Made by a program: the position numbers and the translations under genes. Of a stretch of 64,000 nucleotides of DNA, positions 5,729 through 54,253 are shown one piece after another (within the stretch, counting starts at the first letter, position 1; each line of letters starts with the position of its first letter). Under the pieces are notes generated by a model, which was given only the letters and a program-made list of their open reading frames with translations, was not told where the DNA came from and did not search any database. Source of the DNA: Podarcis muralis (Eukaryota); assembly GCF_964188315.1 (NCBI RefSeq), contig NC_135658.1, positions 22,940,001-23,004,000 of the forward strand, written 5' to 3'.

Positions 5729-7629
5729 TCAGTCACAACAGAACATCTTCACGTCACGAAGTTCTACTTTACCAAGCATTTGATTCTCATTCGCCACCCT
5801 TGTTTGGATGCCACATATGAAGCCCCTAGGGCAGCGCTTGCTCATTTTGCCCTCTTCCATCCGTTGAAAGATATCTTTCTTCACTTTAGCCCCACCACTG
5901 CAGAGGACCTCAAGGTTACTGACTGCATGAGGAATTAGCGGGTGTGGTAATTCAATAGTCAAAGAAAAGGACACCATGTTGCCTTGGGGGCATTTCTGAA
6001 CCGCAACCCATTCCCCGAGCCTGTAAAGAAAAGGACAAGGATGGCAATGTCTAAATAGAAATTTATATACCACAACTTTGTCAATGTATTTTTATTTTTA
6101 AAGTCTCTCCAGAGATATAATTCCAAATTAGAGCAAAAAGCTTTTTTCAGAAAGGATGTATAGAACAGATTCGCCTTCAAATGTGAACCAATTTGAATTT
6201 TGCCTCCACCCCTAGAAGTAAGTTTCACAGGACTTTGTGCAAGCATGTATATTTTGGGGCTGTTAAACTCAGAGTGTGTCCAGATTACCATTTGCCTTTA
6301 ATCTAGCATGAAATATTTCGATCTACCCCTCCCGCTCCTACCCCAAACTTCCAAGCAACAAGTTAATAAAGGAAGAGAAATTCAAAAAGCTACTCACTTT
6401 CCACTTTTAGACTCTACTGTTTTCCCGTCAGTGCAGTGGAGACGGATGCCCTTCAGAGTGAAATCTTTTCTATAGGCTTCATTTACATCTCTGCGAAACT
6501 GGTGGAGAACAGAGGGGAGGAAAGACTGGTGCTTCAATCTGCATCTGCAGTACTGGCAACATTTATGTGTGAGCAAAACAACATTTTTTCAGTGCAAATT
6601 TCTATGAAATACAATGATGGGGAAAAGCTGTTTGTATTCTGTCTGTGAGACTTTTTATTATATTTGTGGTTACTGATTTATTTTGGGGCACTCTACTCCA
6701 CCCTCAAAAGAGGACAATATTTGCATACTACACAAAGCATATGCAAATTTAATGAAAAGCTGTCCTCAGAGGTGTCGGAGCCTCCGCTACGACCGAGCTG
6801 GAAAAGCTCATCCTCCAGTCGAGTCCTCTGGAATCGCCTCCGACGATGATTAACGACCTGAGCCTCTGATAAGGCTCCAGGCACGTTCCCTCATTACGCA
6901 GAGTATCCAGCAGCAGGGAAGGACGAGAAATATGAGCTACATTGCAAAGAGTTTGATTTCTAGTTACGCATACAGAAAAGCATACATCCTCTCTCTGTGA
7001 AAGCAGAGAGCAACTGGAAAACAAAGGAACAGGAAACCAGTAACATCACATCCGTCTCCCATCTTCCGTGAGACTTCCAACAGCCTCGAATCTCTGGAAT
7101 GCAAAACAGAGTCTTGTGACTCCAAGCACTGCACAGTGGCAACACACGGAAACCTAACATGAGGACCCAGGCCATATACTGTGTGTTGGGGACAGAAAAT
7201 CCTGTTGGCATGCCTGGGATTCAGTAATTAGTAAACTGAACTATATATTAGATGAAACAGACTTGGCATCTTGGTGTTTCTGGGACCCTGCGTGGGTTCT
7301 GTGATAGAGGCTGCATTTTTCATTCTGTCTGCTGCTTTCCCTGCCCTTCTTTCTAAATAAAGGTGTTTGTTTGCTTGTGCTTTTCATACGTCTGTATAAT
7401 ATTGTGACCACGACTTAGCATCAGGGTGTCAAAATTCAGACTATAGATAGGCATTTACCTTCATTTGGAATCCATTTGCATATCCCGTGGGACAGAATTC
7501 AGGTTTTCCCCATATACCATCCTTCCCTCCATTGGACACAGTGAGGACTGCATTATGTTTTCGGTCTTCTGCATCACAGAGATGGTAGGAGAAGAAGAGG
7601 AAGACCACAGCGCTGACAGGGAGCTCCAT
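5729..7629 (-). CDS. VMO1: VMO1-like gene A (divergent), 3 coding exons 7629-7459, 6498-6398, 6020-5729; 187 aa secreted beta-prism protein
   Basis: Spliced ORF: MELPVSAVVFLFFSYHLCDAEDRKHNAVLTVSNGGKDGIWGKPEFCPTGYANGFQMK / [33 protein letters not shown] / KLGEW...ICGIQTRV...DVKMFCCD*. Canonical sites AAG|gtaaat, ccag|TTT, AA|gtgagt, tacag|G. Phases 0/2 match the other paralogs. Signal peptide and all 8 mature Cys present. Confidence 0.88.
6761..7431 (+). mobile_element. LTR-like insertion(s) in the intron between coding exons 1 and 2 of gene A
   Basis: TG-start/CA-end segments with AATAAA near 7356; resembles other LTR-like elements here. Boundaries and TSD unresolved. Confidence 0.4.
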
Positions 7630-7873
7630 GGAAAGTGATCTGCACCAGATCTAGCTGCAAAAACTAAATGGATGAATAACAGCATTAAGAATTTATTCCT
7701 TAGGAATAGTGGCTCTTTCCTCTGGTCCCAAATTTGCATTTTCCTCTGGAGGGAAGTGTGGTTACTTTTGGTTGATGGAGTAAAATCAGTTGATGGCTTT
7801 TCTGACTACACCTTTTGATTTCTAACTAACAAAAATGTGAATTTCTTACCCACCCTTCACCCTTGCCAAAATG

Positions 7874-7996: not shown

Positions 7997-9152
7997 CCCT
8001 TCATGGATCACTGCCTTGCCGTGGCGAAGGGGCTTGAAGAACTCAAAGAAGCTATGAACTATGCCGAGCAGGGCACCCAAGATGAACAGGTCATAGTGGA
8101 GAGTTTTGACCAAACGTGATCCACCTGGAGGAGGAACCGGCAAGCCACTCCAGTATCCCTGCCAAGAAAACTCCATGGACAAAGACAACAGACATATAAA
8201 AGTTATGACGCTGGAAGATGAGCCCCTCAGGTCGGAAGGCGTCCAACATGCTACTGAGGAAGAGCGGAGGGCAAGTACAAGTAGATCCAGAGCTGATGAA
8301 GCGGCTGGGCTAAAGCCGAAAGGACATTCAGTTGCGGATATGCCTGGAAGCGAAAGGAAAGTCCAATGCTGTAAAGAAAAATATTGCATAGGAACCTGGA
8401 ATGTAAGAACCATGAACCTGGGTAAGTTGGATGTGGTCAAAAATGAGATGGCAAGAATAAATATTGACATCCTGGGCATCAGTGAACTAAAATGGACGGG
8501 AATGGGCGAATTCAGTTCGGATGACCATCATATCTACTACTGTGGGCAAGAAACCCACAAAAGAAATGGAGTGGCCCTCATAGTCAACAAAAGAGTGGCG
8601 AAAGCAGTACTGGGATGCAATCTCAAAAATGATAGAATGATCTCAATATGAATCCAAGGCAGACCTTTTAACATAACAGTAATCCAAGTTTATGCACCAA
8701 CTACTGGTGCTGAAGAAACTGAAACTGACCAATTCTATGAGAACTTACAAGACCTTATAGAAGTGACACTAAAAAAGGATGTTCTTCTCATTATAGGGGA
8801 TTGGAATGCTAAAGTAGGGAATCAAGAGATAAAAGGAACAACTGGCAAGTTTGGCCTTGGAGAGCAAAATGAAGCAGGGCAAAGGCTAATAGAGTTCTGT
8901 CAAGAGAACAAGCTGGTCATCACAAACACGCATTTCCAACAACACAAGAGACGACTCTACACGTGGACATCACCAGATGGGCATCATCGAAATCGGATTG
9001 ATTATATTCTCTGCAGCCAAAGATGGAGAAGCTCAATACAGTCAGCAAAAACAAGACCTGGAGCTGACTGTGGCTCAGATCATCAGCTTCTTATAGCAAA
9101 ATTCAAGCTTAAACTGAAGAAAGTAGGAAAAACCTCTAGGCCGGTAAGATAC

Positions 9153-9587
9153 TGTAATGGAAATTGGGGTTGCTCGTGCGTAAGTTGCCGCCACTCTTGA
9201 CAAGGTTGCCTGGTTAAACCTTTCCCTGGCTGGACAGCCCTGACTCCGCGGCTGTCTCAGTCACTGGCAGAATCCGTCAGTGGGCGTTTCCTGAACTTCT
9301 ACCAGCATAAAAGTTATTTGACGCCAAGTCTCCGCCTAGCCTCCCTGCGCGGAAGTCCTCTGCGCAGGGTGGGTGTGGGCAGCGGAGGACCCGTGCTCTC
9401 CCCGCTGGTCTCTGGCGAACAGTCCTGGAGCCATCTCTCCGAAGCCCTCCTCTGCCCCCCTTTCTCCCTGGTGTCACGCTGATTTCCTTCCCCGGCCAAT
9501 GAGTCCCCTCTCTCCCTGCTGGGCCCTTCTCCGGCATCGCTTGGGAGCCTTGCCTCCACTCCTGGCTCCGATGGCAGTTCCCTGACA
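9153..9587 (-). mobile_element. Solo-LTR-like element inside BovB
   Basis: TGT...ACA ends; 5-bp TSD gatac at 9148-9152 and 9588-9592. Confidence 0.8.
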
Positions 9588-11426
9588 GATACAATCTAAA
9601 TCAAATCCCTTATGAATACACAGTGGAAGTGAGGAACAGGTTTAAGGATTTAGATTTGCTAGACAGAGTGCCTGAAGAACTATAGATGGAGGCTCGCAAC
9701 ATTATACAGGAGGCAGCAACGAAAACCATCCCAATGAAAAGGAAATGCAAGAAAGCAAAGTGGCTGTCCAATGAGGCCTTACAAATAGCGGGGGAGAGAA
9801 GGCAAGCAAAATCCGAGGGAGATAGAGAAAGATACAGGAAATTGAATGCATATTTCCAAAAAATAGCAAGCAGAGACAAGAAGGCCTACTTAAACTAGCA
9901 ATGCAAAGAAATAGAGGAAAACAACAGACTGGGAAGAACCAGAGATCTGTTCAAGAAAATTGGAGATATGAAAGGAACATTTCGTTCAAAGATTGCCATA
10001 ATAAAGGACAAAAGTGGTAAGGACCTAACAGAAGCAGAAGACATCAAGAAGAGGTGGCAAGAATACACAGAGGAATTATACCAGAAAGATATGGATGTCT
10101 CGTACACCCCAGGTAGTGGGGTTGCTGAGCTTGAGCCAGACATCCTGGAGAGTGAAGTCAAATGGGCCTTAGAAAGCACTGCAAATAACAAGGCCAGTGG
10201 AAGTGATGGTATTCCAGCTGAACTGTTTAAAATTTCAAAAGATGATGCTGTTAAGGTGCTACACTCAATATGCCAGCAAGTTTGGAAAACTCAGCAGTGG
10301 CCAGAGGATTGGAGAAGATCAGTCTACGTCCCAATCCCAAAGAAGGGCAGTGCTAAAGAATGCTCCAACTACCGCACAATTGCACTCATTTCACACGCTA
10401 GCAAGGTTATACTTAAAATTCTACAAGGAAGGCTCAAGCAGTATGTGGACCGAGAACTCCCAGAAGTGCAAGCTGGATTTAGAAGAGGCAGAGGAACCAG
10501 AGACCAAATTGCAAACATGCGCTGGATTATGGAGAAAGCTAGAGAGTTCCAGAAAGACATCTACTTCTGCTTCATTGACTATGCAAAAGCCTTTGACTGT
10601 GTCGAACACAGCAAACTATGGCAAGTTCTTAAAGAAATGGGAGTGCCTGATCACCTCATCTGTCTCCTGAGAAATCTCTATGTGGGACAAGAAGCTACAG
10701 TTAGAACTGGATATGGAACAACTGATTGGTTCAAAATTGGGAAAGGAGTATGACAAGGCTGTATATTGTCTCCCTGGTTATTTAACTTATATGCAGGATT
10801 CATCATGCGAAAGGCTGGGCTGAATGAATCCCTAGCCGGAATTAAGATTGCTGGAAGAAATATCAACAACCTCAGATATGCAGATGACACAACCTTGATG
10901 GCAGAAAGTGAGGAGGAATTAAATAACCTTTTATTGAGGGTGAAAGAGGAGAGCGCAAAATATGGTCTGAAGCTCAACATCAAAAAAACGAAGATCATGG
11001 CCACTGGTCCCATCACCTCCTGGCAAATAGAAGGAGAAGTAATGGAGGCAGTGAGAGATTTTACTTTCTTGGCCTCCATGATCACTGCAGATGGTGACAA
11101 CACCCACGAAATTAAGAGATGCCTGCTTCTTGGGAGGAAAGCAATGACCAACCTAGACAACATCTTAAAAAGTAGAGACATCACCTTGCCAACAAAGGTC
11201 CGTATAGTAAAAGCTATGGTTTTCCCAGTAGTGATGTATGGAAGTGAGAGCTGGACCATAAAGAAGGCTGTTCGCTGAAGAATTGATGCTTTTGAATTAT
11301 GGTGCTGGAGGAGACTTTTGAGAGTCCCATGGACTGCAAGAAGATCAAACCTATCCATTCTGAAGGAAATCAGCCCTGAGTGCTCACTGGAAGGACAGAT
11401 CCTGAAGCTGAGGCTCCAATACTTTG

Positions 11427-13533
11427 TTTTTTTGTTTTGTTTTGTTTTTATATAAATTTTTATTGGATTTTCACATTTTATAAAGACATCACACACAAAA
11501 AAAAGACAAAGACAAAAAAACATGTATAATTTCAGATCCTTACTTTCTTAACCTTATTCCCTGACTTCCCCCCACCCCCACCCCTTCATACATCCCAATT
11601 CCCATAATTAAGTCAGCAAGTTCTTATCTCTCCTCCTTACCATATTAATATTTATTTTTTAACTTAACTCTTCTTAGTTGGCCAAATTTCCTTATCCACA
11701 TCTCTTATAAAAATTAAATTCTTTCCTAAGGTCGACCCAAGTTCCCTTCCACAGATTTCCCATTCTTATATTAGATATAGATCATACTAACTAAACCCAA
11801 AAGTCATAAACATTTTTAAGATTCTGTTTTCCCCTCCCTCCCTTCCCCGATTTCAGTCCCTTCCCAAGTACATGTCCACAATAATAGTTCTTAGCCTGTA
11901 TTCCTCACGTCCGAGGCCTTCAAGTCTCTTTCAGTCCCTCTCTGCCGGTTTTGTTGGTAATCCTTTGTGTTGGTCATCGAATCTCGAAGGAGTTCTATCA
12001 CAATCAAACCAGATTTTCTTCCCACCAGAATACTTGATGACAGCTGCTGCAAAAGATCCACCAATCCTTCATATTCAAAGTGGAAGCCAGTGTGGTGTAG
12101 TGGTTAAGAGCGGTAGTCTCGTAATCTGGGGAACCGGGTTCGCGTCTCCGCTCCTCCACCTGCAGCTGCTGGGTGACCTTGGGCAAGGCACACTTCTTTG
12201 AAGTCTCTCAGCCCCACTCACCTCACAGAGTGTTTGTTGTGGGGGAGGAAGGGAAAGGAGAATGTTAGCTGCTTTGAGACTCCTTAAAGGGAGTGAAAGG
12301 CGGGATATCAAATCCAAACTCTTCTTCTTCAATCATATTTCTTATTTCTTTTAAGTTCCTGTATTCCAAATACTCCTGGGGCCCCCTCCTTCATCTTTCG
12401 CATCTTTCGCAGATTTGTGATCCATGTAATCCAAAGGTCTTCTTCCTTATAATCCACTAGTGTAGGCTTCTGGTTGGTACTTTCCATCTGTGCTTTCTCC
12501 ATTCCTTCCTTGCTCTCCTCCAGTTCTTGAGATATCTCTTCTGATTCAGCTGCAGATTTTTTCTCAGTCAAGTCCTTAGTGCATTCAGCAGAGCTGCTTA
12601 TTCCAGAGGTCAAGGTCGTAAGTTGTTTGTTCATAGCCAAACTCTGCTCTTGCAACATTCCCACGAGAAGAAACATTCTTTCTATCTCTGCCTGTAATTT
12701 TCCATCTGCAGCCATTGTAATGTCTCAGAATTCCCCCTAGAGGGATTCTGGTTACTTAGTAGTCTTTTTCCAACAATCCTTTACCTCGTTGTTTATTTCT
12801 TCTTTGTTTCCAACAACTTTAATTCAATTGTAACTCATTTAGTCCAGAGAGATATTAAATAACAAATTTTTTAGCTTTAAACTGCCCGTTTGACAGCTTT
12901 GACAGCTGTCAAACTCCTTATTCCTCTTCAACAGACTCAGACACAGGACGCTCCCGGGTCCGGGAGGGGGGTTACACAAAAAACTTCTAAAATTCCGCTC
13001 TCACACTCCAGCACAAAACTTCTTTTATCAAATCATGGAAATTAATATCTTTTGTCTCACACCGAGAAAAGTAGTCTCTCCACCTTAGTTCTCCGGTTCT
13101 TGCTTTAGATCATTTGTAGGAGTGGGGGTGCGGACTTCCCTTTAGCACATCCCCCGGTCGTACCGAATTCAAGGGTAAGAATTTTAAAGTCCGAATTCCG
13201 TTCTACTCACGGGTTGTTTCTTTTCGGGTCCGAATTTAGGGGAAAAAGTCAGCGCTCTCCGGCCATGGCTCGTGGCTTCGCTCCACTGAAGTAGCGGTCT
13301 ACTCACAGCACCACGCCACTCTCCGTACCCTCTCCGAAGCCTTTAAAAAGGCTCTTCATGGGTCGGGGGGCGCTTAAGGTGCCCGCCGAGTCACCAAGTC
13401 CGCAGGCTTCAGCGCCTGCGGTTTCTGAGGGTCTCCGCATCGCCGTCGCGGCAAGACCCGTCTCCAGCAGAGCTGATTCCCTCCGGAGCTCGGAGGGAAT
13501 CCGCCATTAGCCGATCGCGCTAACCCGGAAGTC
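11427..13533 (-). mobile_element. Internally deleted L1/Tx1-like element (5' end, short ORF1-like region 12715-12329, 3' tail), inserted in BovB
   Basis: Starts gacttccgggttagcg... and ends AATAAA plus A-rich tail. 19-bp TSD ctgaggctccaatactttg at 11408-11426 and 13534-13552. No RT sequence. Confidence 0.8.
12078..12330 (+). mobile_element. tRNA-derived SINE (Squam3-like) nested in the L1-like element
   Basis: A box gtggtgtagtggtt, B-box-like gggttcgcgtctcc, (ctt)n tail. Confidence 0.8.
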
Positions 13534-14012: not shown

Positions 14013-14045
<33 letters not shown>

Positions 14046-14139
14046 GCACAGTCTCAGGTGTAAGATAGAAGGGAGAAATTGTAACACCTAGGGATGGAAA
14101 TACAAATTGTCATTTAACTTGAAATAAACACATAATTCC

Positions 14140-18332: not shown

Positions 18333-18364
18333 TGACATGTTGTACATGCCTGGTTTAGAGGGTA

Positions 18365-18480: not shown

Positions 18481-18659
18481 TTATTTTCACTATTCCTAAA
18501 TAACTTATGTGCACAAATTTGTTCAGGAAAGTTTTTTTAAACACATTATATTAAGGAAAATTGCTCTGCAGAGTTGCCTGTATTAGGCGACATGACATGC
18601 AAAAATTTACATGTGTATATTGGGAGGAAAATGTACTGAAATGCTGGTGAATTTTCTTG

Positions 18660-18660
18660 A

Positions 18661-18721
<61 letters not shown>

Positions 18722-18723
18722 AA
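18660..18723. repeat. (AAGA)n microsatellite
   Basis: Direct reading. Confidence 0.95.
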
Positions 18724-22201: not shown

Positions 22202-22250
<49 letters not shown>

Positions 22251-22917: not shown

Positions 22918-25900
22918 TCAGCGACAGCAGAAGAGCTCCACATCATTAAGTGCTGTGTCATCGCGCTCGCCTTGGTAACCCTGCACCTTTGTCTGGATCC
23001 CGCAGACAGAACCAGAATAGCAGCGACTGCTCCAAGAGCCAAATCTACCCCAGGCAAGTCCCTGGCCTGTCAGTGCAGTTCCGTCTTGGCAGGTGAACTG
23101 GACGTTGTTGGCTGCTGTATCATCGCCTTTGCCTTGGTGTTCTTCCACTCTCAGAGAGAAAGAGACCAGATTGCCTTGGGGACAGTATTTAATTTCTTTC
23201 CAGGATCCCCACCTGTCAAAGAAGATACTAATGTTAAGTAGAAATGCACAAGGATCCCTCTGCTTGCTCCAAATGGGATCAAGCACTTGTGAGCATTCCA
23301 AGAGGATGCTCCAAAAGCCTCAAAGGCCTTTCCATTGCTGCCTTCCAATGTCCACAATGTACCTGCCTCTGCCCCTCCTTCCTACCCCAACACTCTCCCC
23401 TCCCAGTGAAGGCAGTAGTCCATGGCCAGGAACCCAGAATTAGGTAGAGCTAGTAAGTCTACGAAACTGTTTGATATCATTTTGATGTTCCATTTACAAT
23501 AAATCTTGCTTGGTAGAATGATCTAGCAAAATTATATATTTACTGGAAAAGGAGAGAGATGACAGGGCACATAGATCAGTTCACTAGGGCTCGACTTCTT
23601 TTAAGTTAGAGAACTCTCCTGAAGCAAAACAACCAGTATATTTCAGAGGATGTAATGTGGGATATAGGATTATGATCCTCCATCCCTGCTGTCAAGAAGA
23701 AAACACCAACAACTAGGGTATCATATGCCTGGGCACAGGGGTAGGCTTTAGATAGTTTAAAATTGTTTTCAAATGTTTCGAATATGTTTTGTTTTAACAG
23801 TACTTTTAAAATAAAGTACTTTATTTTAATGTGGAGGAAATGTGGGCTAGTACTTTAATAATTAGTGGTCCTGTAAGGAAAAACAATAACTGACTTGGGC
23901 TGCAATCCTACAAACACTTTGTTGCTGTTTAGTCATTTAGTCGTGTCTGACTCTTTGTGACCCCCTGGACCAGAGCACGCCAGGCCCTCCTGTCTTCCAC
24001 TGCCTCCCGCAGTTTGGTCAGACTCATGTTTGTAGCTTCGAGAACACTGTCCAACCATCTTGTCCTCTTGTCGTCCCCTTCTCCTTGTGCCCTCCATCTT
24101 TCCCAACATCAGGGTCTTTTCCAGGGAGTCTTTTCTTCTCATGAGGTGGCCAAAGTATTGGAGCCTCCGCTTCACGATCTGTCCTTCCAGTGACAAACAC
24201 TTTACCTAGAAGTAAGTCTCACTGAACTCAATGCAACCCCCAAACAAATAACTTCACTTAGTCCTTCCAGTTATTTAATCCCTGACAGTAATATGGTGTT
24301 TTCTAAGAACATCCTGGTTCTCTTGAATAGAATTGGAGTCTGTCTCTATTCGTTTGTTGGCTTCCATGAGGCAGAGCCAGGTCCAGATTTGGCCTTGAGT
24401 AAGATCCCCTTAATACAGAGCTTTCCAAACTTTTCATGAAGGAGTGTGGGGAGAGTTCACGCGACACACCTACACACTGCAGCTGACACACAACTGTGTT
24501 GTGACACACAGTTTGGAAAGCTCTGCCTTAATGTTTCCCTCCTTAAGTGTCATCACTGCCCCTTCATTTGCCTTCTTCTCTGAGTCCAACACATATGGCA
24601 AAAGAGGAGGGCAGGAAGAACAGAATCTGCTCATCCTCCTTCCTCCTTGCACTACTCACTTGCTCAGAGAGGTTAAGTGAACATGCAAGGAGGAGCAGCA
24701 GCTAAGCAAGGAAGAGCCAGAGGTTGGTACAGGGTCCCCTACTGGAGTACAGGCCTCAGCAAGTGTCCAACAGTGCCAGCCCCTCAAGCTGGATTTGCCA
24801 TGAATTCTGTGGTCTTGCAAAGTAGTGTTCGAAAGCAGGAAAATGCTAGAGTTGATACCACTTGAGAGTTTTGAACAGGCAGTATGAATCCTGATGTTCA
24901 CCTTTTGGTGGTGCTGATTTAACCCAGCATAAGTAATTTCCTGTCAGCCCCTCCCATCTTCCAAACAATTACACCAAAGAATAAATGAAAGCAAGAAAGC
25001 TACTTACGGTCCAACTGAAGACTCAATTATTGATCCATCAGTGCAGTGGAGACGGACTCCATTCAGGGCTGTATCATCCCCAATGCCTTGAACTGGCTCT
25101 ACCTATTGGGAAAAATATGCCAGGCTAGCTTCCTCATGAGGTGATTATCTGGGTGATGGCCCATTCAGAGAACAAAGGAAAAGGGGCTCTGTGCCAGACA
25201 CCAAATGGGTGGGACCCATCCTTCAACTCTTAGATAGTTAGAAAGACAAGCCTGGGTTTTAGAGCAGAGTTTTTGGTGGTGTGAGGTAGAAGAACAGCAG
25301 CAAGCAGAGGGCTAGAGAATAATGTTTGATTTCTGTTTGTATCCAAGGCTGTGGCTATGAGAGAGAGAACCTACCTTTTGTAGGTAATGCTGTAAACCTC
25401 TCCATTGTAGGCTCAGGTTGTATACATGTGCAAATTAAACCATAGATCATAAAGACAACACAGTCTCCACTGTGCCTTATTCTAAAAGGAAACCTGAACC
25501 CTGGGTAAGCACTTGGAACTCCTGGAATCTCGCACCACTTGGAAATTGGGCTGGTATGCGACAGTGGTGTCAGAAGGTGAGATTTGTGTTTCCTGGAGGT
25601 GGACCTGTGAGGAAGGTGTGCCCATGCCAAAATGAAGGGGAGGAACAGCAACTTCCCTGGAGTAGGTCAGGTAGATGCTCCAGCAGCAGTTAGTGCAGCA
25701 GTGAGACCAGCTACCTGAGGAGCTGATGATGACTGATTTCTCTACCCCTTGGGAGCCTGTTGTGGAAAATGGGGTGCAGGAGAAAAGTGCCTCAGTGGAG
25801 GACAAACTGCAGGATGGAGATGAAGAGTGGCTGCTAATAGATCTCTTTACTCCATGTGTGCCAGCGGAGCAGGAGGAGCAGCCTCACTCTAAAGAAAACA

Positions 25901-26322
25901 TGAACCCCAGCTAAATGCCCGGAAACTCTGGAATCTTGCACCACTCAGAGACTGGGGTGGCATTCAATAATATCATGGAGTCCCATTCTAACCACATAGC
26001 ACAGAAAGGAAACAATCTTACCATTGAGAAAAAGCTCTTATTCCCTGCACAGATCACTGGGGGTGGGGGAAATAGGGATGGTATTCAACTAAGCTTTACA
26101 CAGATTTGTCCCATTAATGAACACTACTAAAGTCTATTAATTGCATCAGGCTTCTCTTGAGTAAAGCTGAGCTGAATACAGTACCTCCAAAAGATATTGC
26201 CTTGTGAGACAGTTGGAAGGGCTTCATTGACCATACCTGGCCCAAAGGTCACTGGCCCCAGTCGCCAACAGGATGCAACCACTTACATACAACCTGTGGC
26301 ATTGAGGGGGACTTGCACCCCT

Positions 26323-26362
<40 letters not shown>

Positions 26363-26849
26363 ACAAACCATGCTAGAATACTTTCCCAGTAAAGAAATGA
26401 ATTTAACAGAATCTCTCCTGATCAACCTCAGGGTAGGCGAAGAGGAAACCAGCCCATCACCTGGTTGCTGATATCTTGCCCATCATTCCTTAACACTTCT
26501 CCACCTTTTAGACAAAGGAGAAGAATAATAGACTTAAGAGTACAGCCATTGCCTATGCTCCCCGCCCCCTTCTCACAGAGGTCTAAAACTATGTTCTGGG
26601 AAGCATTCAGAAAGAAAGTAGGGGAAGAACTTTAGAGAGAGCTGAATGTGACAACATCTCAGGAGCAAACCTTACCTTCAGTGAGAAACCATGAGCATAA
26701 GATCCTGCTGGACAAAACTGGATTGCACCCCAAATACCCCACGGTCCTCCATTTGACACTGTGAGGATAGAATTATAGTTTCTGGCTTCTGCAGGCGCAA
26801 GGGAGCAGGAGAGGGTCAAGAAGACCACAGCCAGGATGGTAAAATCCAT
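22918..26849 (-). CDS. VMO1: VMO1-like gene B, exons 26849-26676, 25102-25008, 23212-22918; 187 aa
   Basis: [58 protein letters not shown] / [31 protein letters not shown] / PWGSW...[12 protein letters not shown]...[18 protein letters not shown] sites, three DDTA(L/A)N repeats, 8 Cys, TATAAA about 55 nt upstream of the ATG. Confidence 0.95.
23921..24192 (-). mobile_element. BovB 3' fragment (272 bp) in intron 2 of gene B
   Basis: 11-bp TSD acaaacacttt at 23910-23920 and 24193-24203. Confidence 0.9.
24416..24525. mobile_element. hAT MITE
   Basis: TIR cagagctttccaaact; TSD ccttaata/ccttaatg. Confidence 0.75.
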
Positions 26850-29026: not shown

Positions 29027-29318
29027 TCAGAAACAGCAGTAGAGGTGTACATCATTAAGTGCTGTGTCATCACTCAGGCCTTGTTTATCCTCCACCTTTG
29101 TCTGTATCCCACAGATAGAACCAGTGCAACGACGACTCAGTGAGCCAAAATGACCCCTGTTAAGTCCATGACCCTTCAGCACCTCTCCATCTTTGCAGAT
29201 GAACATGATGTTGTTGGCTGCTGTATCATCATCTATGCCCCGGCCTTCTTCCACTCTCAGAGAGAAAGAGACCAGATTGCCTCTGGAACAATATTGGGCC
29301 TGTGTCCAGGATCCCCAC
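29027..29318 (-). pseudogene. VMO1: Orphan VMO1-like exon 3 (open frame; its exons 1-2 are not found upstream)
   Basis: ttgacag|G TGG GGA acceptor, then [36 protein letters not shown]...[14 protein letters not shown]. No exon-2-like sequence between 29319 and 30915. Confidence 0.8.
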
Positions 29319-29550
29319 CTGTCAAAGATGACATCAATGTTAATTAGAAATGCACAAACATCCCTCTGCTTGCTCAAAACAGGATGAAGCCTTTGTGAGC
29401 ATTCCAACTGGATGCTCCAAAAGTCTCATTCATGTGTTCACACTGTACCTGCCTCTGCCTGTCCTTCCTTTCCCAACACTCTCTCCTCCCAGTGAAGGTA
29501 GTGGCCCTTGGCCAGGAGCACAGAATTAGGTATCATTGGTACATGGGTAT

Positions 29551-29805
29551 AGGTAAAGGTAAAGGGACCCCTGACCATTAGGTCCAGTCGTGGCTCACTC
29601 TGGGGTTGCAGCGCTCATCTCACTTTATTGGCCGAGGGAGCTGGCATACTGTCTAACCATCTCGTCCTCTGTCGTCCCCTTCTCCTTGTGCTTTTGATCT
29701 TTGTGATCTTTCCCAACATCAGGGTCTTTTCCAGGGAGTCTTCTCTTCTCATTAGGTGGCCAAAGTATTGGAGCCTCAGCTTCAGGAACTGTCCTTCCAG
29801 TGAGC
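29551..29805. mobile_element. Chimeric junction: Sauria SINE 5' part (+) fused to a BovB fragment (-)
   Basis: The SINE head stops at ...gggagctggc and continues directly into antisense BovB. Confidence 0.8.
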
Positions 29806-30915
29806 ACCCTAACAGATACAATGAGAATTCAGGAAAGGTGAAAGACATGAGAAAGTGCCACCACGTGCCGAGGATGGGATTGTGAATCTCACATAGGGAC
29901 AGCCAGGACTGGTCCCAGCCTGAGCCATTGTCACCTACGCAGCTTACATGGGCTAGTGGATCATGCAGGCCCACTCCAATGCTCCTAGGACCACACACTA
30001 CCATCAGCAACACCATGCCAGTTGATCATGCAGCCACTTCTATGGATAGCCATGGTGGGAGCCCAGGACCCTCCTTCAAAGTGAGGCATTGTGGATTATG
30101 TCAGCCTGGAGAACACCTGTCCTAAGATCTTATATAAACTTGCAATGTCTGCTTTATAGAAGTTAAGGAAGGCATGTTAGCCCATAACGGCCTTCTCAGG
30201 GATTGTGGTTGTTGTAGTACAGCAAAAAAAAGGGTTTTTTTATTTTTTGAAAGCTGCCTGCACATCTTGCTTCAAAACATTCATTCTAATGGGCCTAGAG
30301 GCTTCCTGCAGCTGGCAAACTCCTTTCCTCCCTGCCGCTTATTTATGGCCATTTATCCTTAGCTGTAATCCTTATTCTTTCCTGCCTGTGACAATTTTTC
30401 CCCATGATGCTTTCCCATCCATATATGGTGTTGTATCCTTTATTCCTGCAACTGTTGGTTGTTCTGTCATGTCTCGGGAGAAGCTGTTATCTTACAGTTT
30501 CCGAAACTCACTGCATCGCTTTGTCCAATTCAGCTTCCAATAAACAAGCCGTCTTTGCTGTTTTTCCAGCCTAGGAAGAACAGTCTGAATCCAGACTGCA
30601 GATCGTTAATCCAAAAACTTCTCTTCTTGCAGCTGGCAAACTCCTTTCCTCCCTGCCGCTTATTTATGGATTTATGGCCATTCATCCTTATCTCCTTAAC
30701 ACATTCCTTTGTGGATAATCGAGGTTAGGGAGCATTTGAAAGCAATTCTGGCCATTTGGCCTAGCATCTCCTTAGTTAAGAGTCCATCCCTGTCCTATTG
30801 CTTCCCCACATTTCTTGTTGAGTTCAAAAACTGTGTTCTGGGGAGTGTTCAAAAAAAACAACAAAGGAAGGAGAGAGAGATCTGATTGTGAAAGCAACCC
30901 AACAGCAAACCTTAC

Positions 30916-31086
30916 CTTCAGTGAGAAGCCATGAGCATATCCCCGTGGACAAAATTGGATCATCCCCCAAGTGCCCCATGGTCCTCCATTTGTCACTGTG
31001 AGGATAGAATTATAGTTCTTGTCTTCTGCATGGGCAAGGCAGCTGAAGAGGATCAAGAAGAGCATAGTAGTGATGGTGAAGTCCAT
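30916..31086 (-). pseudogene. VMO1: Orphan VMO1-like exon 1 with promoter and partial intron 1
   Basis: [57 protein letters not shown]|gtaagg. TATAAA at 31153-31148. Differs from gene E exon 1 at 4 of 171 nt. No downstream exon 2; direct splicing to the orphan exon 3 would frameshift (phase 0 to phase 2). Confidence 0.8.
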
Positions 31087-34405: not shown

Positions 34406-36115
34406 AAGGAAAAAGCTTAATCCAGCCTTGTGCAGAGTCCCAAATTCTACAAACAGGGAAAGGGAGTGGGGAAGGGCGAGTGTGTGGGAAGGAGATGGCC
34501 CAACCCCTCACAGTGATGCACTGGGACCTGCAGGGAGGAGAGGGGGTTGGGCACCAGCTGCTGCTATTGCGGCTCCGCTTCTCAGTTCCACCAGTTGGTA
34601 CCGCTCAACGCATCCGACCAGGGTGATGGTAGTGGCAGGAGTGGCCTAAGGGTGCCTGGCTCAGGCAGGTGCGCAGGGGTCATAGCCGCTGACCATAGAT
34701 ACTATGTTACTGGCGCAGAAGTGCTGCCTTGAAACATCTGGTGCGGGAGCCTCTACTGACACCCAAGGCTGGTTCATGGAAGCCTTGTGGTTCTACCATA
34801 TATCATCAAAGGCTGCTGCATATAACCAAGACATTTACCAGTACAGTATTGTGACTTACGCCTCCTGGTGACAGCCATTTGGGCAGCTCAGCCAGCCCTG
34901 CTCTTTCCCCGTATTCCAATGGGGGGTGGAGGGGGATGGAATCCACTGGAGCAGTCAAGTACAACATTACCTGTTTGGCTAGAGTGGACATGCAGGGGAA
35001 TGTTGGTCCAGCCAGTTTAAACTTCCTGTTATACCTGGCTGGGGCATCCTTTCCTTTGCATGTGACCAGTAGGTGGGCGTGACCTTTCCAGACCTGGTAA
35101 AAGGCCAAGACACGTAGCCACCTCCCTTCTTTTTCGTCCTGCCTGCTTCCTGCTTCACCTGAACTGCACTGCTGGCTCTCTCAGCCAGCAGTCCCTGGGT
35201 TATCTCCCATATGGGGTAAACCTATTTCTATGTATCTGTAACTTTAAGCCTAAAGCCTGCCTCCAGGGATCACACTGTGCTCTGCCTGATCATGAGTAAG
35301 CTTATTTTTGTTACTTATGAATAAGACTGTTGTGTCTTTATTCTTTTAGGAGGGATTAAAGGGGTCTTACCAGGAACATATCCCAATCTGGGCAAGCCAG
35401 ATTGAATTGCTTATTATTTTAAGAGATTCTAACGAGTCTGCAACCAACTTCCTGCTGTGTGATATGGGAATGTACTCTGCTATATGAAGAAATTTGCTAG
35501 CGCAAGTTAGGAAGGATAATATTAATCAATCTATCCTCTCCTGTTGCCCACAACTTTCCCACAGGCAGGTGCATTCTGCCAGCTGACATTTCTAAGCCAC
35601 CTTTAAAAGCATCCTCTCACAGGTGATTTTCAAATCTGAAGCTGAGGCATTGTGATTCCCTGCTTCCCACTCCCACACACACACAAAAAACAAGTTCAGT
35701 TCTAGGCCAAAAAAGAACCCGAAAATGTCAGTGTGGGGCTAAGGAAGCCCTCTTGGTGCCAACGTTGTCTGTTTTTAGCCCCAGACAAAAGCATTTTTAT
35801 TTACCCAGGTTTTGGCCCTTGATTTGGAGGGTAACCAGTTATGTCTGTGGCCTCTTTTTGAGTCAAGTCTCGGGACCAAATGGAAAGGACTCAGACTGTG
35901 ATTCAGCACACTGTGTCTTTGTTTGTTAATCAACACCTGCATAGTTGTGCCCCTTCTTTAGTATTTTTCATTGCTTCTTATCCAGAAGTGATAGGTGCAG
36001 AATTCTGTTCAAAAGAATCACACAGAATTCTCAAGACAATATTTAATAGTCGTTAACCTTCATGACTACCAAAAAGTAGCAGATATAAGCTGTAAAGGGT
36101 GCAGGTACATAGAGT

Positions 36116-49371: not shown

Positions 49372-49800
49372 CTGCTTTCCCCTCCCACAAAAAAACAAGT
49401 TCAGTTCTAGGCCCAAAAAAAGAAACCCCAAAATTTCAATGTGGGGCTAAGGAAGCCCTCTTGGTGCTAGACAAAAGCATTTTTATTTACCCAGGTTTTG
49501 GCTCTTGATTTGGAGGATAACCAGTTATGTCTGTGGCCTCTTTTTGAGTCAGGTCTCGGGGCCAACAGAAAGGATTCAGACTGTGATTCAGCACCCTGTG
49601 TCTTTGTTTGTTAATCAACACCTGCATAGTTGTGCCCCTTCTTTAATACTTTTCATTGCTTCTCATCCAGAAGTGATAGGTGCAGAATTCTGTTCAAAAG
49701 AATCACACAGAATTCTGAAGACAATATTTAATTGTTGTTAACCTTCACAAATGCCGAATAGTACCAGAGATATGCCGTAAGGGGCGGAGGTACATTGGGT

Positions 49801-52800
49801 TCAATCACAGCAGAAGAACTTCACATCATTAAGTGCTGTGTCATCGCCGTTGCCTTGGTAAGACTCCACCTTTGTCTGGATCCCACAGATATAACCAGAG
49901 GAGCAGCGATTGCTCCATGGGCCAAAATTACCCCAGTTAAGTCCCTGGCCCATCAGCCCAGTTCCGTCTTGACAGGTGAACTGGATGTTGTTGGCGGCCG
50001 TATCGTCACCATCGCCCTGGTATCCTTCCACTCTCAGAGAGTAAGAGATCAGATTGCTTTGAGGGCAATACTGAATCCCTGTCCAGGTTCCCCACCTGTC
50101 AAAGAAGACACTGGTGTTAATTATTAAAACATGGAGAGCCTTCTGCTTACATCTAAATGGATTAGCTCCATGTGAATATTCCAAGAGGATGCCCCCAATG
50201 TCTCAAGGGCTCTGCATTGTTGCATCCAAAGTATCACAAAGCAATTTCCTCTGCCCCTCCTTTCTGCCCCAACACTCGCTTCTCCCGGTGAGGGCAGAAG
50301 CAGTTCTCCGGGAACCCAGAAGCAGGTATTGTTGCTGTCTGAGTCTGTGAAACAGTTAATTGTCACTTTAATGTATCATTTCCAATAAGTATTGCTCAAC
50401 ACAGCCTAAGATCTTCTGGGCCTGAAATGGTCCAGAACAATTATTTGTTTACTGGAAAAGAGGAGAGAGTCTCAAAAAGCACACAATTATCCATTTATTG
50501 GGGCTCAACCTCTTTTGAGCTAGAGAACTCTTCTGAGGCATAGTGCCTTCCTGTTTTATTGGTTTTAGGTTTTCTTTTATGTTTTAAGGATATATTGTTT
50601 GGCGTTTTAGACTGTATACTGCATAGAGCTTTTTGAAATGTTGGGGATTGTAAATATTAAATAAACAAATATCTGATCCCTCCCGACTGGAATATGGTGT
50701 TTTCTGAATAAAATCCTTGTTCTCTTGAACAGACTTGGAGTTTCCATTTATCTCTATTTGTTTCTTGGCTTCCATGAGGCAGAGACAGATCCAGGTTTAG
50801 TCTTGGGTAAAATGTTTGCCTCCTTAATTCCCATCACTGCCCTCTCACTTAGCTGCTTCTCTGAGTCCAACATCTATGGCAGACCAAGAGGGAGAGGGCA
50901 AGATAACCAGAGGCTGCTGCTCCCTGTCCTTCCTCCTGTCCCTTGCTCAAAGAGATTCAGTGAACTTGTAAAGAGAGCAAGAGTTGCAACTAAGAAAGGA
51001 AGCTCAAGGTGTCTGTACTGGGCCCCCTATTGGGATACAGGGATTGGCAAGTGACCAACAGTGCCAACCTCTAAAACTCAACTGCAAAGTTGAGTTGGAA
51101 GCCAGCAAAAAGCTAGAGTTGGTGCCCTTTCAGAGGTCAGAAAAAGCAAGGTGAACCCTATGGTTTCTTTGTGCTGGTCTAACCTAGCATAACAAATTTC
51201 AGTTCAGCCCCTCCCACCAACACCTTCCCAAAAATTGCAACCAAAAAGAAATGAAATCCAGAGAGATGCTCACGATCCAGTTGCAGACTCAATTACTGAA
51301 CTGTCAGTGCAGTGCAGGCGAATTCCATTTAGGGCTGTATCATCCTCCTTAGAACCACCACCTTGGGGTGGCTCTACCTAGTGGGAAGAGAGATGAAGAG
51401 ACTGGGTTAAATCTGAGGATAAACCAAGGATTGCAAAAATCAAAGTCAAAAGTAAATCATGAATTCAATGAGATCTAAGTTCAATTAACGTGGCATGGAT
51501 GCAACAGTTTTCAGCTAGAATTATCCATTCTCTTAAGTCTCTTAAGACACAAGGGTCATCTAGTCCAACCCCCTGCGATGCAGCAATTATTTGCCCAACA
51601 TGATGCTTTAACCCACAACCCTAAGATGAAGAGTCTCATGCCCAACCAACTGAGCTATCACACCAGCCATACAGCCCATGTGAAACTCATTCCTTGAAAT
51701 GATCGTCAGCAAAAAAATAATAAAAATTAAGCATTCAGAATGTTGCAAGCTGCTGTCCTGAAGTATAAAACATACTTCAGGAATCTTTGAAGACATTTAA
51801 AAAAGCACACACTGGAATGTAAATAGTTTAATTCATGTTTCGTTCTCCTGGCAATTATGGGGATCACTTTCATGTGCAGATTTTTGCATTAACTCAATCA
51901 GCTTGGTTAAACCAAATTAGTTCATTCCAAGCACTGCCTTTCCCCCACAGCCAAAATTAGTTAAAGGTCCTGTGCTCTTCTTTACAACTTTTTCACTGCT
52001 TGCCAGGGAATTCAGTCGGGATCTCCTTCACCTTGGACGAGAATCATGCTAGTAGATCTAAAAGATAAGCGCACCATGCAAACCAAAACACGACATTGCT
52101 GCAAAACAATTGTTTTGTATGTGTGTGAGTGTATGTATTTTTGTTGTTTATTTTTGAATTGCACAATCCAATTCTTTGTGGGTGAGCGATGAAACACACT
52201 GCATTCAGCCGTAATTATAAACCTTGAGTGATTTTTTTTTTTAAGACTGGCAATCACTTCCAATACTGCAGGCTTCCCAACTTTGATCCCTCTCAGATGT
52301 TTTGGATGATAACACCCATCATCCCAGATCATTTGTCTTGCTGGCTGGAGTTGATGGGAGATGGAGTCCAACATATCTGGAGATATGTTGGAAAACATCC
52401 TACATGTAAGCAGTCCCACCAAACAGAGCCGGCCCAGTCATTAGGCAGGGTGGGGCTGCTGCTTCAGGTGCCAGAAACCCCCAATGTAGCATGCCCAAGG
52501 GTGCCCCACATCCCTTGCTGTCTCCACTATTGGCAGAGAAGCACCATTGGCACTGATTTTGAGCAAGACCACATACATTTGGGGCAAGATCTCACCCCAA
52601 ATTGGCATAATCTTGCCCCCATAGCCCAATGGCTGGGAGCACAGTGGAAGCAGAGCAGGCGGTGTCAGCTGAAGTAGTTAGGTCATGGTGGTAGTGACAG
52701 CAGCAGTTGGACGAAGTGGATCTTCCCCTTTTGCCTCAAGCAGTGAAACAGGATGCACTGCCCCACCACCAAATAATCTGCCCGCATACCAGAGCTTTTT

Positions 52801-53320
52801 TTTTCCCATCCAGAACTTGCCAGAACTCAGTTCCGGCAGCTCTCAAGCGGGCACTATTGCCGTTCTAAGAGAACAAGACACCTCTTTTTCTAGAAAAATA
52901 GCACTGCTGCATAAGTTGCTAATATATTTTACTTGGTGGCCCAAATTACCATCTGGCTACTCAACCTCTTATTGCCCATATTAGGGCAATAAGAGGCCCT
53001 TATTGCCCATATTAGTCCTCTGGACTAATAGACTTAAGAGTCCATCAGTTCCATATTGTTTCCCCATCTTCAGAAGGTGTTCAGAAAGAAAGGGAGGGAG
53101 GAACTTCAAAGTGAGCCAATGGTGACAGCAACCCTGGAGGAAACCTTACCTTCAGTGAGAAACCAAAAGCATATCCCTGAGGGCAAAACTGGATTACCCC
53201 CCAGGTACCCCAAGATCCTCCATTTGTCACAGAAAGGACGGAATTAAAGTCTCGGGCTTCCACAGACCAAAGGCAGCAGCAGAGGATCAAGAAGAACGCA
53301 GGTGAGGCAGTGAGATCCAT
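49801..53320 (-). CDS. VMO1: VMO1-like gene F, exons 53320-53150, 51377-51274, 50095-49801; 189 aa
   Basis: [57 protein letters not shown] / [34 protein letters not shown] / SWGTW...[12 protein letters not shown]...[14 protein letters not shown]. Canonical splice sites; TATA at 53371-53366. Recent paralog of D. Confidence 0.95.

Positions 53321-54216: not shown

Positions 54217-54253
<37 letters not shown>

What the first reader, a model, noticed from the sequence alone, without database searches (positions are those of the whole stretch)
5729..53320. Expanded, actively diversifying tandem cluster of VMO1-like beta-prism genes
Seen: five complete VMO1-like genes plus fragments of at least one more within 48 kb. 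They show direct duplication, inversion, near-identical inverted copies and pseudogenisation, and a further gene probably lies just left of the window. Established: VMO1 is a three-fold beta-prism protein, first described from the hen egg vitelline membrane, proposed to bind carbohydrate, and generally a single gene in mammals and chicken. Inference: this is a birth-and-death family of secreted lectin-like proteins in a lizard, possibly for egg-coat, epithelial defence or gland secretion roles. The function is not shown by the sequence.
Basis: partly seen in the sequence, partly recalled or inferred. Interest (0 to 1): 0.75.

Follow-up and report, generated by a model that had tools for sequence, protein, structure and literature searches.

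The report
Wall lizard VMO1 gene cluster
The window holds a real tandem cluster of six VMO1-like genes in the common wall lizard, but public databases already annotate all six, and related lizards and a turtle have similar clusters, so it is a sound but ordinary rapidly evolving gene family.

Summary
A family HMM finds exactly 17 VOMI (PF03762) exons. Five loci have three exons (A, B, D, E, F). Locus C has only exons 1 and 3.

The window is 100% identical to Podarcis muralis assembly GCA_964188315.1, OZ076957.1, about 22.94-23.00 Mb. [quoted passage not shown]

Lacerta agilis and P. raffonei have colinear clusters with gene-by-gene orthologs. L. agilis has seven complete genes and two remnants in about 63 kb. 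A turtle has three genes in 24 kb.

Birth-and-death evolution is supported:
- C is a chimera, made when a deletion fused exon 1 of an inverted E copy to exon 3 of an older paralog.
- A 189-aa gene present in both relatives is missing at 18539/18540.
- The inverted E copies show gene conversion.

Orthologs are under purifying selection (dN/dS 0.17-0.46). D versus F gives 0.83, with changes concentrated in the loops before the DDT motifs.

E is not dead. It is spliced in one small library, which reads ATG where the reference has ATT. Function is inferred only.

Other first-reader notes of this scan lie on this same window.

The parts
5729..7629 (-). Gene A. Exons 7629-7459, 6498-6398 and 6020-5729. 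Intact divergent A-type VMO1 paralog: the DDT-type motif of all three repeats is replaced, all 8 Cys are kept, and the mature net charge is +8.
   Evidence: It is 98% identical to the P. muralis protein P0122 and 88% to L. agilis P0123. The model of P0122 (pLDDT 84) matches 1VMO with TM 0.89. dN/dS against Lacerta is 0.46.
18539..18540 (.). Breakpoint where a whole 189-aa VOMI gene ('gene5') is missing from this genome. The gene lies between the B and A orthologs in L. agilis and P. raffonei.
   Evidence: The upstream flank L003:17445-17924 ends at window 18539. The downstream flanks L010:3029-3237 and L007:~6382-6572 start at window 18540. The HMM scan finds no VOMI exon between 7630 and 22917.
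22918..26849 (-). Gene B. Exons 26849-26676, 25102-25008 and 23212-22918. Intact, 8 Cys, net charge -4.
   Evidence: It equals P0144, accession XP_028581448.1. Its ortholog is L. agilis P0015, with dN/dS 0.20.
29027..31086 (-). Locus C, a chimeric remnant. Exon 1 (31086-30916) plus 0.55 kb of intron come from an inverted E-type copy (E'). Exon 3 (29318-29027) comes from an older, divergent paralog. There is no exon 2. The public model P0083 uses a cryptic acceptor at 29409/29408, so that exon 3 starts at 29407.
   Evidence: no exon 2. (exon-1 segment 94.65-96.3% identical to E). (exon 3 is only 67% identical to E in protein, dS 0.55). E' is a complete gene in L. agilis (L001:18154-21653) and in P. 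raffonei (P0125). P0083 matches the window's C translations.
36116..39503 (-). Gene D. Exons 39503-39333, 37379-37276 and 36410-36116. Intact, 8 Cys, net charge -5.
   Evidence: It equals P0140, accession XP_028581449.2. Its ortholog L. agilis P0002 aligns to chicken VMO-I (1VMO) at E 2e-66 with all 8 Cys. dN/dS against Lacerta is 0.19. No reads or contigs lay on exon 1 in the four runs laid.
43030..45328 (+). Gene E, the only one on the + strand. Exons 43030-43200, 44142-44236 and 45034-45328. E-type: it lacks two of the eight Cys. The reference has ATT at the ancestral start codon (43030-43032). The current public model starts at the Met 7 codons downstream.
   Evidence: Contigs of run X1 join 43198->44140 (GT..AG, cut +2) and link exon 2 to exon 3. 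They read G at 43032, which gives ATG. P0130 (179 aa, this assembly's contig) contrasts with P0133 (186 aa, an earlier version of the same accession, starting with ATG). The same two Cys are absent in the L. agilis and P. raffonei E-type genes.
49801..53320 (-). Gene F. Exons 53320-53150, 51377-51274 and 50095-49801. Intact direct duplicate of D, 8 Cys, net charge -9.
   Evidence: It equals P0135, accession XP_028581451.2. D versus F gives dS 0.074 and dN/dS 0.83. 11 of the 19 residue changes fall in the 27 loop positions before the DDT motifs, Fisher p 9e-6.
35660..40625 (-). D duplication block, directly repeated at 49372-54470 (the F block).
   Evidence: Self-BLAST gives 77-92% identity in six colinear pieces.
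42938..43750 (+). E exon 1 plus the 5' part of intron 1. Its inverted repeat is 30359-31177 (C exon 1 region).
   Evidence: 94.65% identity over 823 columns. Within-species E/E' identity (96.3% P. muralis, 94.4% L. agilis) exceeds between-species identity (about 92%), which indicates gene conversion.

Best explanation
This is the main VMO1 (VOMI, PF03762) tandem array of the common wall lizard, Podarcis muralis (OZ076957.1, about 22.94-23.00 Mb).

Content. There are five intact three-exon genes (A, B, D, E, F) and one chimeric remnant (C). Each intact gene encodes a secreted protein of about 165 residues, a three-fold beta-prism homologous over its whole length to hen VMO-I.

How the array changes (shown by comparison with relatives). 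It evolves by segmental duplication (D/F), inversion with gene conversion (E and the E' copy that gave C its exon 1), and deletion (loss of 'gene5'; fusion of E' exon 1 to exon 3 of an older paralog).

Age (shown). The array is shared with other Lacertidae gene by gene. Most duplications therefore predate the Podarcis-Lacerta split, and some paralog lineages predate Lacertidae. Most copies are kept by purifying selection.

Function (inferred from chicken, mammal, turtle and frog data, not shown here). The products are secreted carbohydrate- or glycosaminoglycan-binding proteins of egg envelope, tear or gland fluids. The paralogs differ mainly in the three loops ahead of the DDT motifs and in net charge (-9 to +8). 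This suggests different ligands or partners.
For: Family membership: Pfam VOMI E 1.8e-17 to 4e-36. There are exactly 17 exons. The D ortholog aligns to 1VMO at E 2e-66 with 8 Cys. The A-type model matches 1VMO with TM 0.89.

Identity of the genome: L006 is 100% identical over 22,060 nt. Proteins on record for P. muralis equal my models.

Orthology and colinearity: L. agilis L001, L003, L007 and P. raffonei L004, L010. The exon-3 tree pairs A, B, D and E with their orthologs at 100% bootstrap and puts B with Pogona, Sceloporus and Anolis genes.

Selection: orthologs give dN/dS 0.17-0.46 at dS about 0.11-0.13 against Lacerta. D/F gives 0.83 with loop enrichment, p 9e-6.

Structural events: chimera C, gene5 deletion, gene conversion.

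Expression: spliced E contigs in run X1.

Functional context: PMC9363672 (heparin and GlcNAc-oligomer binding, tear film, snake venom gland), PMC7412644 (VMO1 ranked third in abundance in sea-turtle tears), PMC8613984 (listed for frog lip glands).
Against: - No tissue of expression is known. Two bulk RNA runs and one single-cell RNA run of the same species gave essentially no reads on D exon 1 or on E, with about 6-12% of each run read and tissues unknown.
- Expression of A, B, C and F was not tested.
- X1 is only guessed to be RNA. A processed copy elsewhere in the genome could in principle give the spliced contig.
- The exon-3 tree has only 97 columns and its deep nodes are weak.
- D/F dS (0.074) is below the Podarcis-Lacerta ortholog dS (0.11). 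The pair is therefore either younger than that split or homogenised, and I could not tell which.
- Ligand binding is not testable here.
Confidence: 0.88

Rival explanations
1. The array is under active diversifying (positive) selection and supplies a repertoire of recognition proteins, for example for pathogen glycans, gamete or egg-coat interaction, or chemical signalling. On this view it is more than an old family under mostly purifying selection.
For: - D versus F gives dN/dS 0.83, with 11 of 19 changes in the 27 loop positions ahead of the DDT motifs.
- The replacements lie mostly on the F side: F versus Lacerta D gives dN 0.075, against 0.021 for D.
- The A-type stem branch is 5.4 changes per column, with all three motifs replaced and charge +8.
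- At least three A-type proteins are on record for P. muralis.
- Gene content differs between three lacertids.
Against: - No pairwise dN/dS exceeds 1.
- The loop positions are the least conserved across the whole family (consensus 'x' positions), so relaxed constraint explains the enrichment equally well.
- Orthologs of A, B, D and E are conserved (dN/dS 0.17-0.46).
- No site or branch-site test was run.
- VMO1 is absent from the text and held supplements of a Lacerta femoral-gland proteome.
Confidence: 0.25
2. Most copies are dead or dying. On this view the array is a graveyard of VMO1 duplicates with one functional gene.
For: - C lacks exon 2.
- E has ATT at its start codon in this assembly and lacks two Cys.
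- A has lost all three conserved motifs.
- No reads lay on D exon 1 or on E in three RNA runs.
Against: - A, B, D, E and F have open frames and canonical splice sites.
- Their orthologs in Lacerta show dN/dS 0.19-0.46 at dS about 0.11. Pseudogenes would approach 1 and pick up stops.
- E is spliced in X1, with ATG.
- The loss of two Cys in E is shared by Lacerta and P. raffonei genes, so it is an old, retained state.
- The A-type model keeps the 1VMO fold.
Confidence: 0.07
3. Part of the array is an assembly artefact: uncollapsed haplotypes or mis-joins that create the D/F or C/E duplicates.
For: Duplicated blocks and an inverted repeat are the kind of structure that assemblers mishandle. The missing gene5 and the truncated E' could also be assembly collapses.
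Against: - The copies are 77-96% identical, not above 99%.
- D-type, F-type, E and E'-type copies exist in the same order in L. agilis and/or P. raffonei.
- Separate D and F proteins were already on record under earlier versions of the same P. muralis accessions.
- Six runs from two studies hold 65-92% of the sampled words of the D-E stretch.
Confidence: 0.03

Closest known systems
[quoted passage not shown]
   Same: Homologous over the whole mature protein (the D ortholog aligns at E 2e-66). It has three internal repeats with the WGxW...C and DDTA(L/A)N motifs, eight Cys in A, B, D and F, and a signal-peptide-like N-terminus. The A-type model superposes on 1VMO with TM 0.89 and rmsd 2.7 A.
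   Different: The hen protein is cationic, pI about 10 (PMC9363672). Here there are six loci in 48 kb and at least ten loci on the chromosome. B, D, E and F are acidic or near neutral (-9 to -1) and only A is cationic (+8). A has lost the DDT motifs and E has lost two Cys.
Annotated VMO1-like clusters of Lacerta agilis (CM020419.1, 20.11-20.17 Mb) and Podarcis raffonei (CM049753.1, about 23.35-23.44 Mb)
   Same: They are colinear and 85-97% identical in DNA, with 1:1 orthologs of A, B, D and E, an inverted E/E' pair around D, and a second A-type gene beyond A.
   Different: Both keep a complete E' and the 189-aa gene5, which P. muralis has lost. At the corresponding place L. agilis keeps only exon 1 of F, and it keeps exons 1-2 of the old C paralog where P. 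muralis keeps exon 3.
VMO1 expansion in the Amur ide Leuciscus waleckii (PMC5854124)
   Same: [quoted passage not shown]
   Different: It is a fish, the expansion is independent, and the authors interpret it as egg protection in alkaline water. The lizard array is of similar size but is shared across a family of lizards and is not tied to any known habitat.
Jacalin-related and bacterial beta-prism lectins (for example artocarpin 1J4T, V. cholerae Bap1/RbmC)
   Same: The same beta-prism architecture. Foldseek gives E 1e-3 to 6e-5 and query-normalised TM (TMq) 0.38-0.56. In those lectins the loops at one end of the prism bind sugar.
   Different: Sequence identity is only 7-16% and there is no detectable sequence homology. 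This is a fold-level resemblance and not family membership.

Membership tests
VMO1 / VOMI (Pfam PF03762) | Match to the VOMI profile above Pfam's gathering score (25 bits) | tested here: met
   The exon-3 ORFs of all six loci score 64-125 bits. The short exons 1 and 2 alone score 19-22 bits. A family HMM recovers all 17 exons.
VMO1 / VOMI (Pfam PF03762) | Full-length homology to the solved founder, hen VMO-I (1VMO) | tested here: met
   P0002, the L. agilis ortholog of D (96% identical in exon 3), aligns residues 22-188 to 1VMO residues 2-162 at E 2.2e-66. I sent no spliced proteins of my own making to search tools. I searched the window exon by exon, by reference, and used database proteins that equal the models.
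VMO1 / VOMI (Pfam PF03762) | Three-fold beta-prism fold built from three Greek-key repeats | tested here: met
   This was tested for the most divergent member. The AlphaFold2 model of the A-type protein P0122 has pLDDT 84.1 and pTM 0.80. Its best PDB match is 1VMO at E 1e-15, TMt 0.89, rmsd 2.7 A. The other genes were judged by sequence only.
VMO1 / VOMI (Pfam PF03762) | Eight conserved cysteines (four disulfides in 1VMO according to PMC9363672) | tested here: met
   A, B, D and F have 8 Cys in the conserved columns. E has 6, lacking the Cys of the 'ICG' motif and the second Cys of the terminal 'CC'. C has 7 in its two canonical exons. The feature is therefore not met for E and C. Which Cys pair with each other was not tested.
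VMO1 / VOMI (Pfam PF03762) | The DDTA(L/A)N motif in each of the three repeats | tested here: met
   The motif is present three times in B, D, E and F and twice in C. It is not met in A, where all three are replaced (KDFTLKG, PHAVSNL, GKVELRD). The same state is found in the L. agilis and P. raffonei A-type proteins.
VMO1 / VOMI (Pfam PF03762) | Secreted: N-terminal signal peptide | not tested
   Exon 1 of every locus begins with a hydrophobic stretch of about 21 residues ahead of the first repeat. The model shows a helix at residues 5-17. No signal-peptide predictor was available.
VMO1 / VOMI (Pfam PF03762) | Binding of carbohydrate or glycosaminoglycan (heparin, GlcNAc oligomers in hen VMO1) | not testable with these tools
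   Known for the hen protein only (PMC9363672).
Birth-and-death multigene family | Orthologous copies retained across species, together with lineage-specific gains, losses and pseudogenes | tested here: met
   There are 1:1 orthologs of A, B, D and E. gene5 is lost at 18539/18540. E' is truncated and fused into C in P. muralis only. L. agilis keeps only exon 1 of F at the corresponding place. Podarcis has three A-type copies.

The most novel reading that the evidence does not exclude
Lacertid lizards may have turned VMO1 into a small repertoire of functionally distinct secreted beta-prism proteins. It would comprise a cationic A-type that lost all three conserved motifs and is itself multiplying, an E-type that gave up one presumed disulfide, and acidic D/F-type copies whose loops before the DDT motifs are being reshaped. 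The array would then work as a fast-turnover recognition or defence system and not as an egg-membrane gene. Its copy number would be polymorphic between and perhaps within species (E start codon ATT versus ATG, gene5 deletion).
Probability: 0.2. Interest if true: 0.5.

Novelty: already known. Interest (0 to 1): 0.25.

Why it matters
As a discovery it matters little. The genes are already in public annotation for this very species, and comparable arrays are annotated in other lizards and in a turtle.

Its modest value is descriptive. [quoted passage not shown] I found no paper in that library describing the squamate arrays. Wall lizards carry at least ten loci.

The three-genome comparison gives clean, datable examples of how such an array changes: a whole-gene deletion, a fusion deletion that made a chimeric gene which public annotation calls coding, gene conversion between inverted copies, and a start codon that differs between individuals.

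If the paralogs prove to bind different ligands, the array would be a convenient natural series for studying beta-prism specificity.

Tried and rejected
- Haplotype or assembly artefact for D/F and C/E. Rejected on identity (77-96%) and on conservation of the arrangement in two other species.
- E as a pseudogene. This was my first reading, from ATT at the start and two missing Cys. I rejected it because X1 contigs are spliced and read ATG, an earlier version of the same P. muralis accession starts with ATG, and the Cys loss is shared by the Lacerta and P. raffonei orthologs, which are under dN/dS 0.17-0.36.
- C as a simple exon-2 deletion. Replaced by the chimera reading once L. agilis and P. 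raffonei showed a complete E' at that position and C's exon 3 proved unrelated to E-type.
- Further VOMI fragments in the window. None was found by tblastn or by the HMM.
- Locating the extra A-type genes of P. muralis. P0122 and P0151 are not on record with contigs, so the gene left of the window was inferred from relatives only.
- Literature. Five searches found no paper on lizard VMO1 arrays.
- Femoral-gland role. There is no VMO1 in the Lacerta femoral-gland proteome text or its held supplements.
- Sceloporus and Thamnophis loci showed only one gene within the 10 kb flanks fetched on each side. Tight arrays are therefore not universal, although these species have several copies on the same chromosome.
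- Joined spliced proteins of my own making were not sent to any search tool. I searched exons by reference and used database proteins identical to the models.

Full report
**What is in the window**

Pfam's VOMI model (PF03762) matches the exon-3 ORFs of six loci at E 1.8e-17 to 4e-36. I built a family HMM from more than 100 database proteins and ran it over every stop-to-stop piece of all six frames. It finds exactly 17 exons: three each for A, B, D, E and F and two for C. Nothing else scores below E 0.8.

The exon borders read from the sequence give a conserved structure:
- Exon 1 (171-174 nt) holds the hydrophobic N-terminus and the first half of repeat 1.
- Exon 2 (95-104 nt) ends two bases into a codon.
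- Exon 3 (292-295 nt) holds repeats 2 and 3.
- All introns are GT..AG.

The window has no N and no soft-masking.

**Where it comes from**

Locus L006, fetched through protein P0083, is 100% identical to window 41086-19027 over 22,060 nt. The window is therefore Podarcis muralis assembly GCA_964188315.1, record OZ076957.1, at about 22,940,001-23,004,000.

| Locus | Accession | Protein id | Note |
|---|---|---|---|
| A | XP_028581447 | P0122 | two residues differ from the window |
| B | XP_028581448.1 | P0144 | |
| C | not given by the tools | P0083 | 183 aa |
| D | XP_028581449.2 | P0140 | |
| E | XP_028581450.2 | P0130 | 179 aa |
| F | XP_028581451.2 | P0135 | |

My exon models for B, D, E and F reproduce these proteins exactly. 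I did not send joined, self-made spliced proteins to any search tool. I searched the window exon by exon, by reference, and used the identical database proteins for whole-protein steps.

**State of each locus**

A, B, D and F are intact and have eight Cys.

C has no exon 2, and the canonical exon 1 to exon 3 join is out of frame. The public model restores a frame with a cryptic acceptor at 29409/29408, which replaces exon 2 by 30 intron-derived residues.

E has ATT where its relatives have ATG (43030-43032). It also lacks two Cys: the one in the 'ICG' motif and the second Cys of the terminal 'CC'.

Mature net charges are A +8, B -4, C 0, D -5, E -1 and F -9.

A has replaced the DDT-type motif of all three repeats. 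Even so, an AlphaFold2 model of the A-type protein P0122 (pLDDT 84, pTM 0.80) superposes on hen VMO-I (1VMO) with TM 0.89 and rmsd 2.7 A. Confidence dips where those motifs would lie. The L. agilis ortholog of D aligns to 1VMO at E 2e-66 with all eight Cys.

**Repeat structure**

- The D block (35660-40625) and the F block (49372-54470) are direct repeats at 77-92% identity.
- E is the only gene on the + strand.
- Its exon 1 plus 0.55 kb of intron (42938-43750) is an inverted repeat of the C exon 1 region (30359-31177), at 94.65% identity.
- None of these identities is compatible with uncollapsed haplotypes.

**Comparison with relatives**

Lacerta agilis (L001, L003, L007) and P. raffonei (L004, L010) are colinear with the window at 85-97% DNA identity.

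L. agilis carries, over about 63 kb:
- an F remnant (exon 1 only)
- E
- D
- a complete inverted E copy (E')
- a remnant of an older paralog (part of exon 1, and exon 2)
- B
- a 189-aa gene ('gene5')
- A
- a second A-type gene

That makes seven complete genes and two remnants.

Three events are specific to the P. muralis lineage or differ between lineages:

(i) gene5 is present between B and A in both relatives and absent here. Its upstream flank ends at window 18539 and its downstream flank begins at 18540.

(ii) E' is complete in L. agilis (188 aa) and in P. raffonei (P0125, 199 aa). Here only its exon 1 and 0.55 kb of intron survive, joined to an exon 3 that is just 67% identical to E-type (dS 0.55). 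C is therefore a deletion chimera of two genes.

(iii) The E/E' exon-1 segment is more similar within species (96.3% and 94.4%) than between species (about 92%), which is the signature of gene conversion between inverted repeats.

- Both relatives have a second A-type gene starting 5.7-7.5 kb beyond A.
- Two more A-type proteins are on record for P. muralis (P0150, P0151).
- Window 430-1014 is a 72% copy of A's distal upstream region.

Two more VOMI genes lie about 177-188 kb to the left on the same chromosome (L005). Counting these, the family has at least ten loci.

**Age and selection**

An exon-3 tree (97 columns; deep nodes weak) pairs A, B, D and E with their Lacerta or P. raffonei orthologs at 100% bootstrap. 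It groups B with Pogona, Sceloporus and Anolis genes. It places the A-type on a 5.4-changes-per-column stem next to two Anolis proteins.

I made Nei-Gojobori counts exon by exon and summed them:

| Comparison | dS | dN/dS |
|---|---|---|
| B vs Lacerta ortholog | about 0.11 | 0.20 |
| D vs Lacerta ortholog | about 0.11 | 0.19 |
| E vs Lacerta E / E' | 0.13 / 0.16 | 0.36 / 0.32 |
| A vs Lacerta ortholog | 0.12 | 0.46 |
| E vs P. raffonei ortholog | 0.04 | 0.17 |
| D vs F (paralogs) | 0.074 | 0.83 |

For D versus F, most replacements lie on the F side. Eleven of the 19 residue changes fall in the 27 positions just ahead of the three DDT motifs (Fisher p 9e-6). Those positions are also the least conserved across the whole family. 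Relaxed constraint and diversifying selection therefore cannot be separated here.

**Expression**

I laid one stretch, 39330-45329, which covers D exon 1 and all of E.

Two bulk RNA-seq runs and one single-cell RNA run of the same species gave essentially no reads on either gene. About 6-12% of each run was read, and the tissues are unknown.

Contigs of a small library, X1, join E exon 1 to exon 2 (43198->44140, GT..AG) and carry the end of exon 2 in front of exon 3. They read G at 43032, which restores ATG.

An earlier version of the same P. muralis accession (P0133, XP_028581450.1) is 186 aa and starts with ATG. The version on this assembly's contig starts at an internal Met and is 179 aa. 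The ATT is therefore an allele, or less likely an error, of this reference and not the state of the species.

The two-Cys loss of E is shared by the L. agilis and P. raffonei genes, so it is an old, retained feature.

A, B, C and F were not tested for expression because the reads tool allowed one call.

**Known context**

- Hen VMO1 binds heparin and GlcNAc oligomers, is weakly anti-Listeria, and occurs in oviduct, egg and seminal plasma. Homologs occur in camel tears and in a snake venom gland (PMC9363672).
- VMO1 ranks third in abundance among proteins of loggerhead turtle tears (PMC7412644).
- It is listed among proteins of male frog lip glands (PMC8613984).
- No paper in the held library describes the lizard arrays.
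- A Lacerta femoral-gland proteome does not mention VMO1.
- Annotated multi-copy sets on one contig are common in squamates, turtles, frogs and fish. Mauremys reevesii has three genes in 24 kb.

**Verdict**

However, the array is shared across Lacertidae, is mostly under purifying selection and is already annotated. It is an ordinary lineage-expanded secreted-protein family. The function is inferred and was not shown.

Other first-reader notes of this scan lie on this same window (A motifs and charge, D/F loops, E cysteines). I re-tested those three points and they hold. Whether the two Cys lost in E formed one disulfide was not tested.

Noticed in passing
window 43030-43032: The reference has ATT at the ancestral start codon of E. 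Contigs of run X1 (depth 12.4 of 12.4) and one read of X23 have G at 43032, giving ATG. An earlier version of the same P. muralis accession also starts with ATG. This is probably a start-loss allele segregating in P. muralis.
   Followed up: partly
window 18539/18540: A whole 189-aa VOMI gene, present between the B and A orthologs in L. agilis and P. raffonei, is missing here. A (GAAA)n microsatellite lies about 130-200 bases away, at about 18,670-18,740.
   Followed up: yes
window 29318-29409: The public model for C (P0083) rescues the frame with a cryptic AG acceptor at 29409/29408. It translates 30 intron-derived residues in place of exon 2, so the product would lack the second half of repeat 1 and one conserved Cys. 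The 30 codons upstream of the exon-3 acceptor are also open in B, D and F.
   Followed up: partly
window 45205-45328; L001:2996-3304 and 21345-21647; L004:11996-12304: The two Cys missing in E (the 'ICG' Cys and the second Cys of the terminal 'CC') are also missing in both L. agilis E-type genes and in the P. raffonei genes. This is a conserved subfamily trait. Whether the two form one disulfide was not tested.
   Followed up: partly
L001:1-671 against window 53223-47364: At the place that corresponds to F, L. agilis has only exon 1 and about 0.54 kb of intron 1. The alignment then jumps to the equivalent of window 47364. F exons 2-3 are absent at that place in L. agilis, or the 3' part of F was gained in Podarcis.
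   Followed up: partly
window 40805-41109: A SINE-like repeat (copies at about 20.0, 53.5, 57.3 and 60.2-60.5 kb) collects hundreds of partly fitting RNA reads in every run. This is repeat-derived signal and not local transcription.
   Followed up: no
window 41494-42125: X1 contigs at depth about 4 cover this intergenic stretch upstream of E. It is duplicated at 56806-57251 (93.75%). It could be low-level transcription, a distal 5' exon or DNA background.
   Followed up: no
window 8100-11500 and 13370-14100: LINE reverse-transcriptase and endonuclease-like ORFs and other repeat fragments fill the 15 kb between A and the gene5 breakpoint. P. raffonei is colinear here at 92-98% identity.
   Followed up: no
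L005 (OZ076957.1, 22,741,854-22,767,126): Two further annotated VOMI genes (190 aa and 198 aa, P0099) lie about 177-188 kb left of the window. In the exon-3 tree P0099 groups with gecko and skink genes, so it looks like an older paralog lineage.
   Followed up: partly
window 39201-39330: A tetranucleotide-type microsatellite sits at the start of intron 1 of D. It translates as repeated SFLP in the exon-1 ORF.
   Followed up: no
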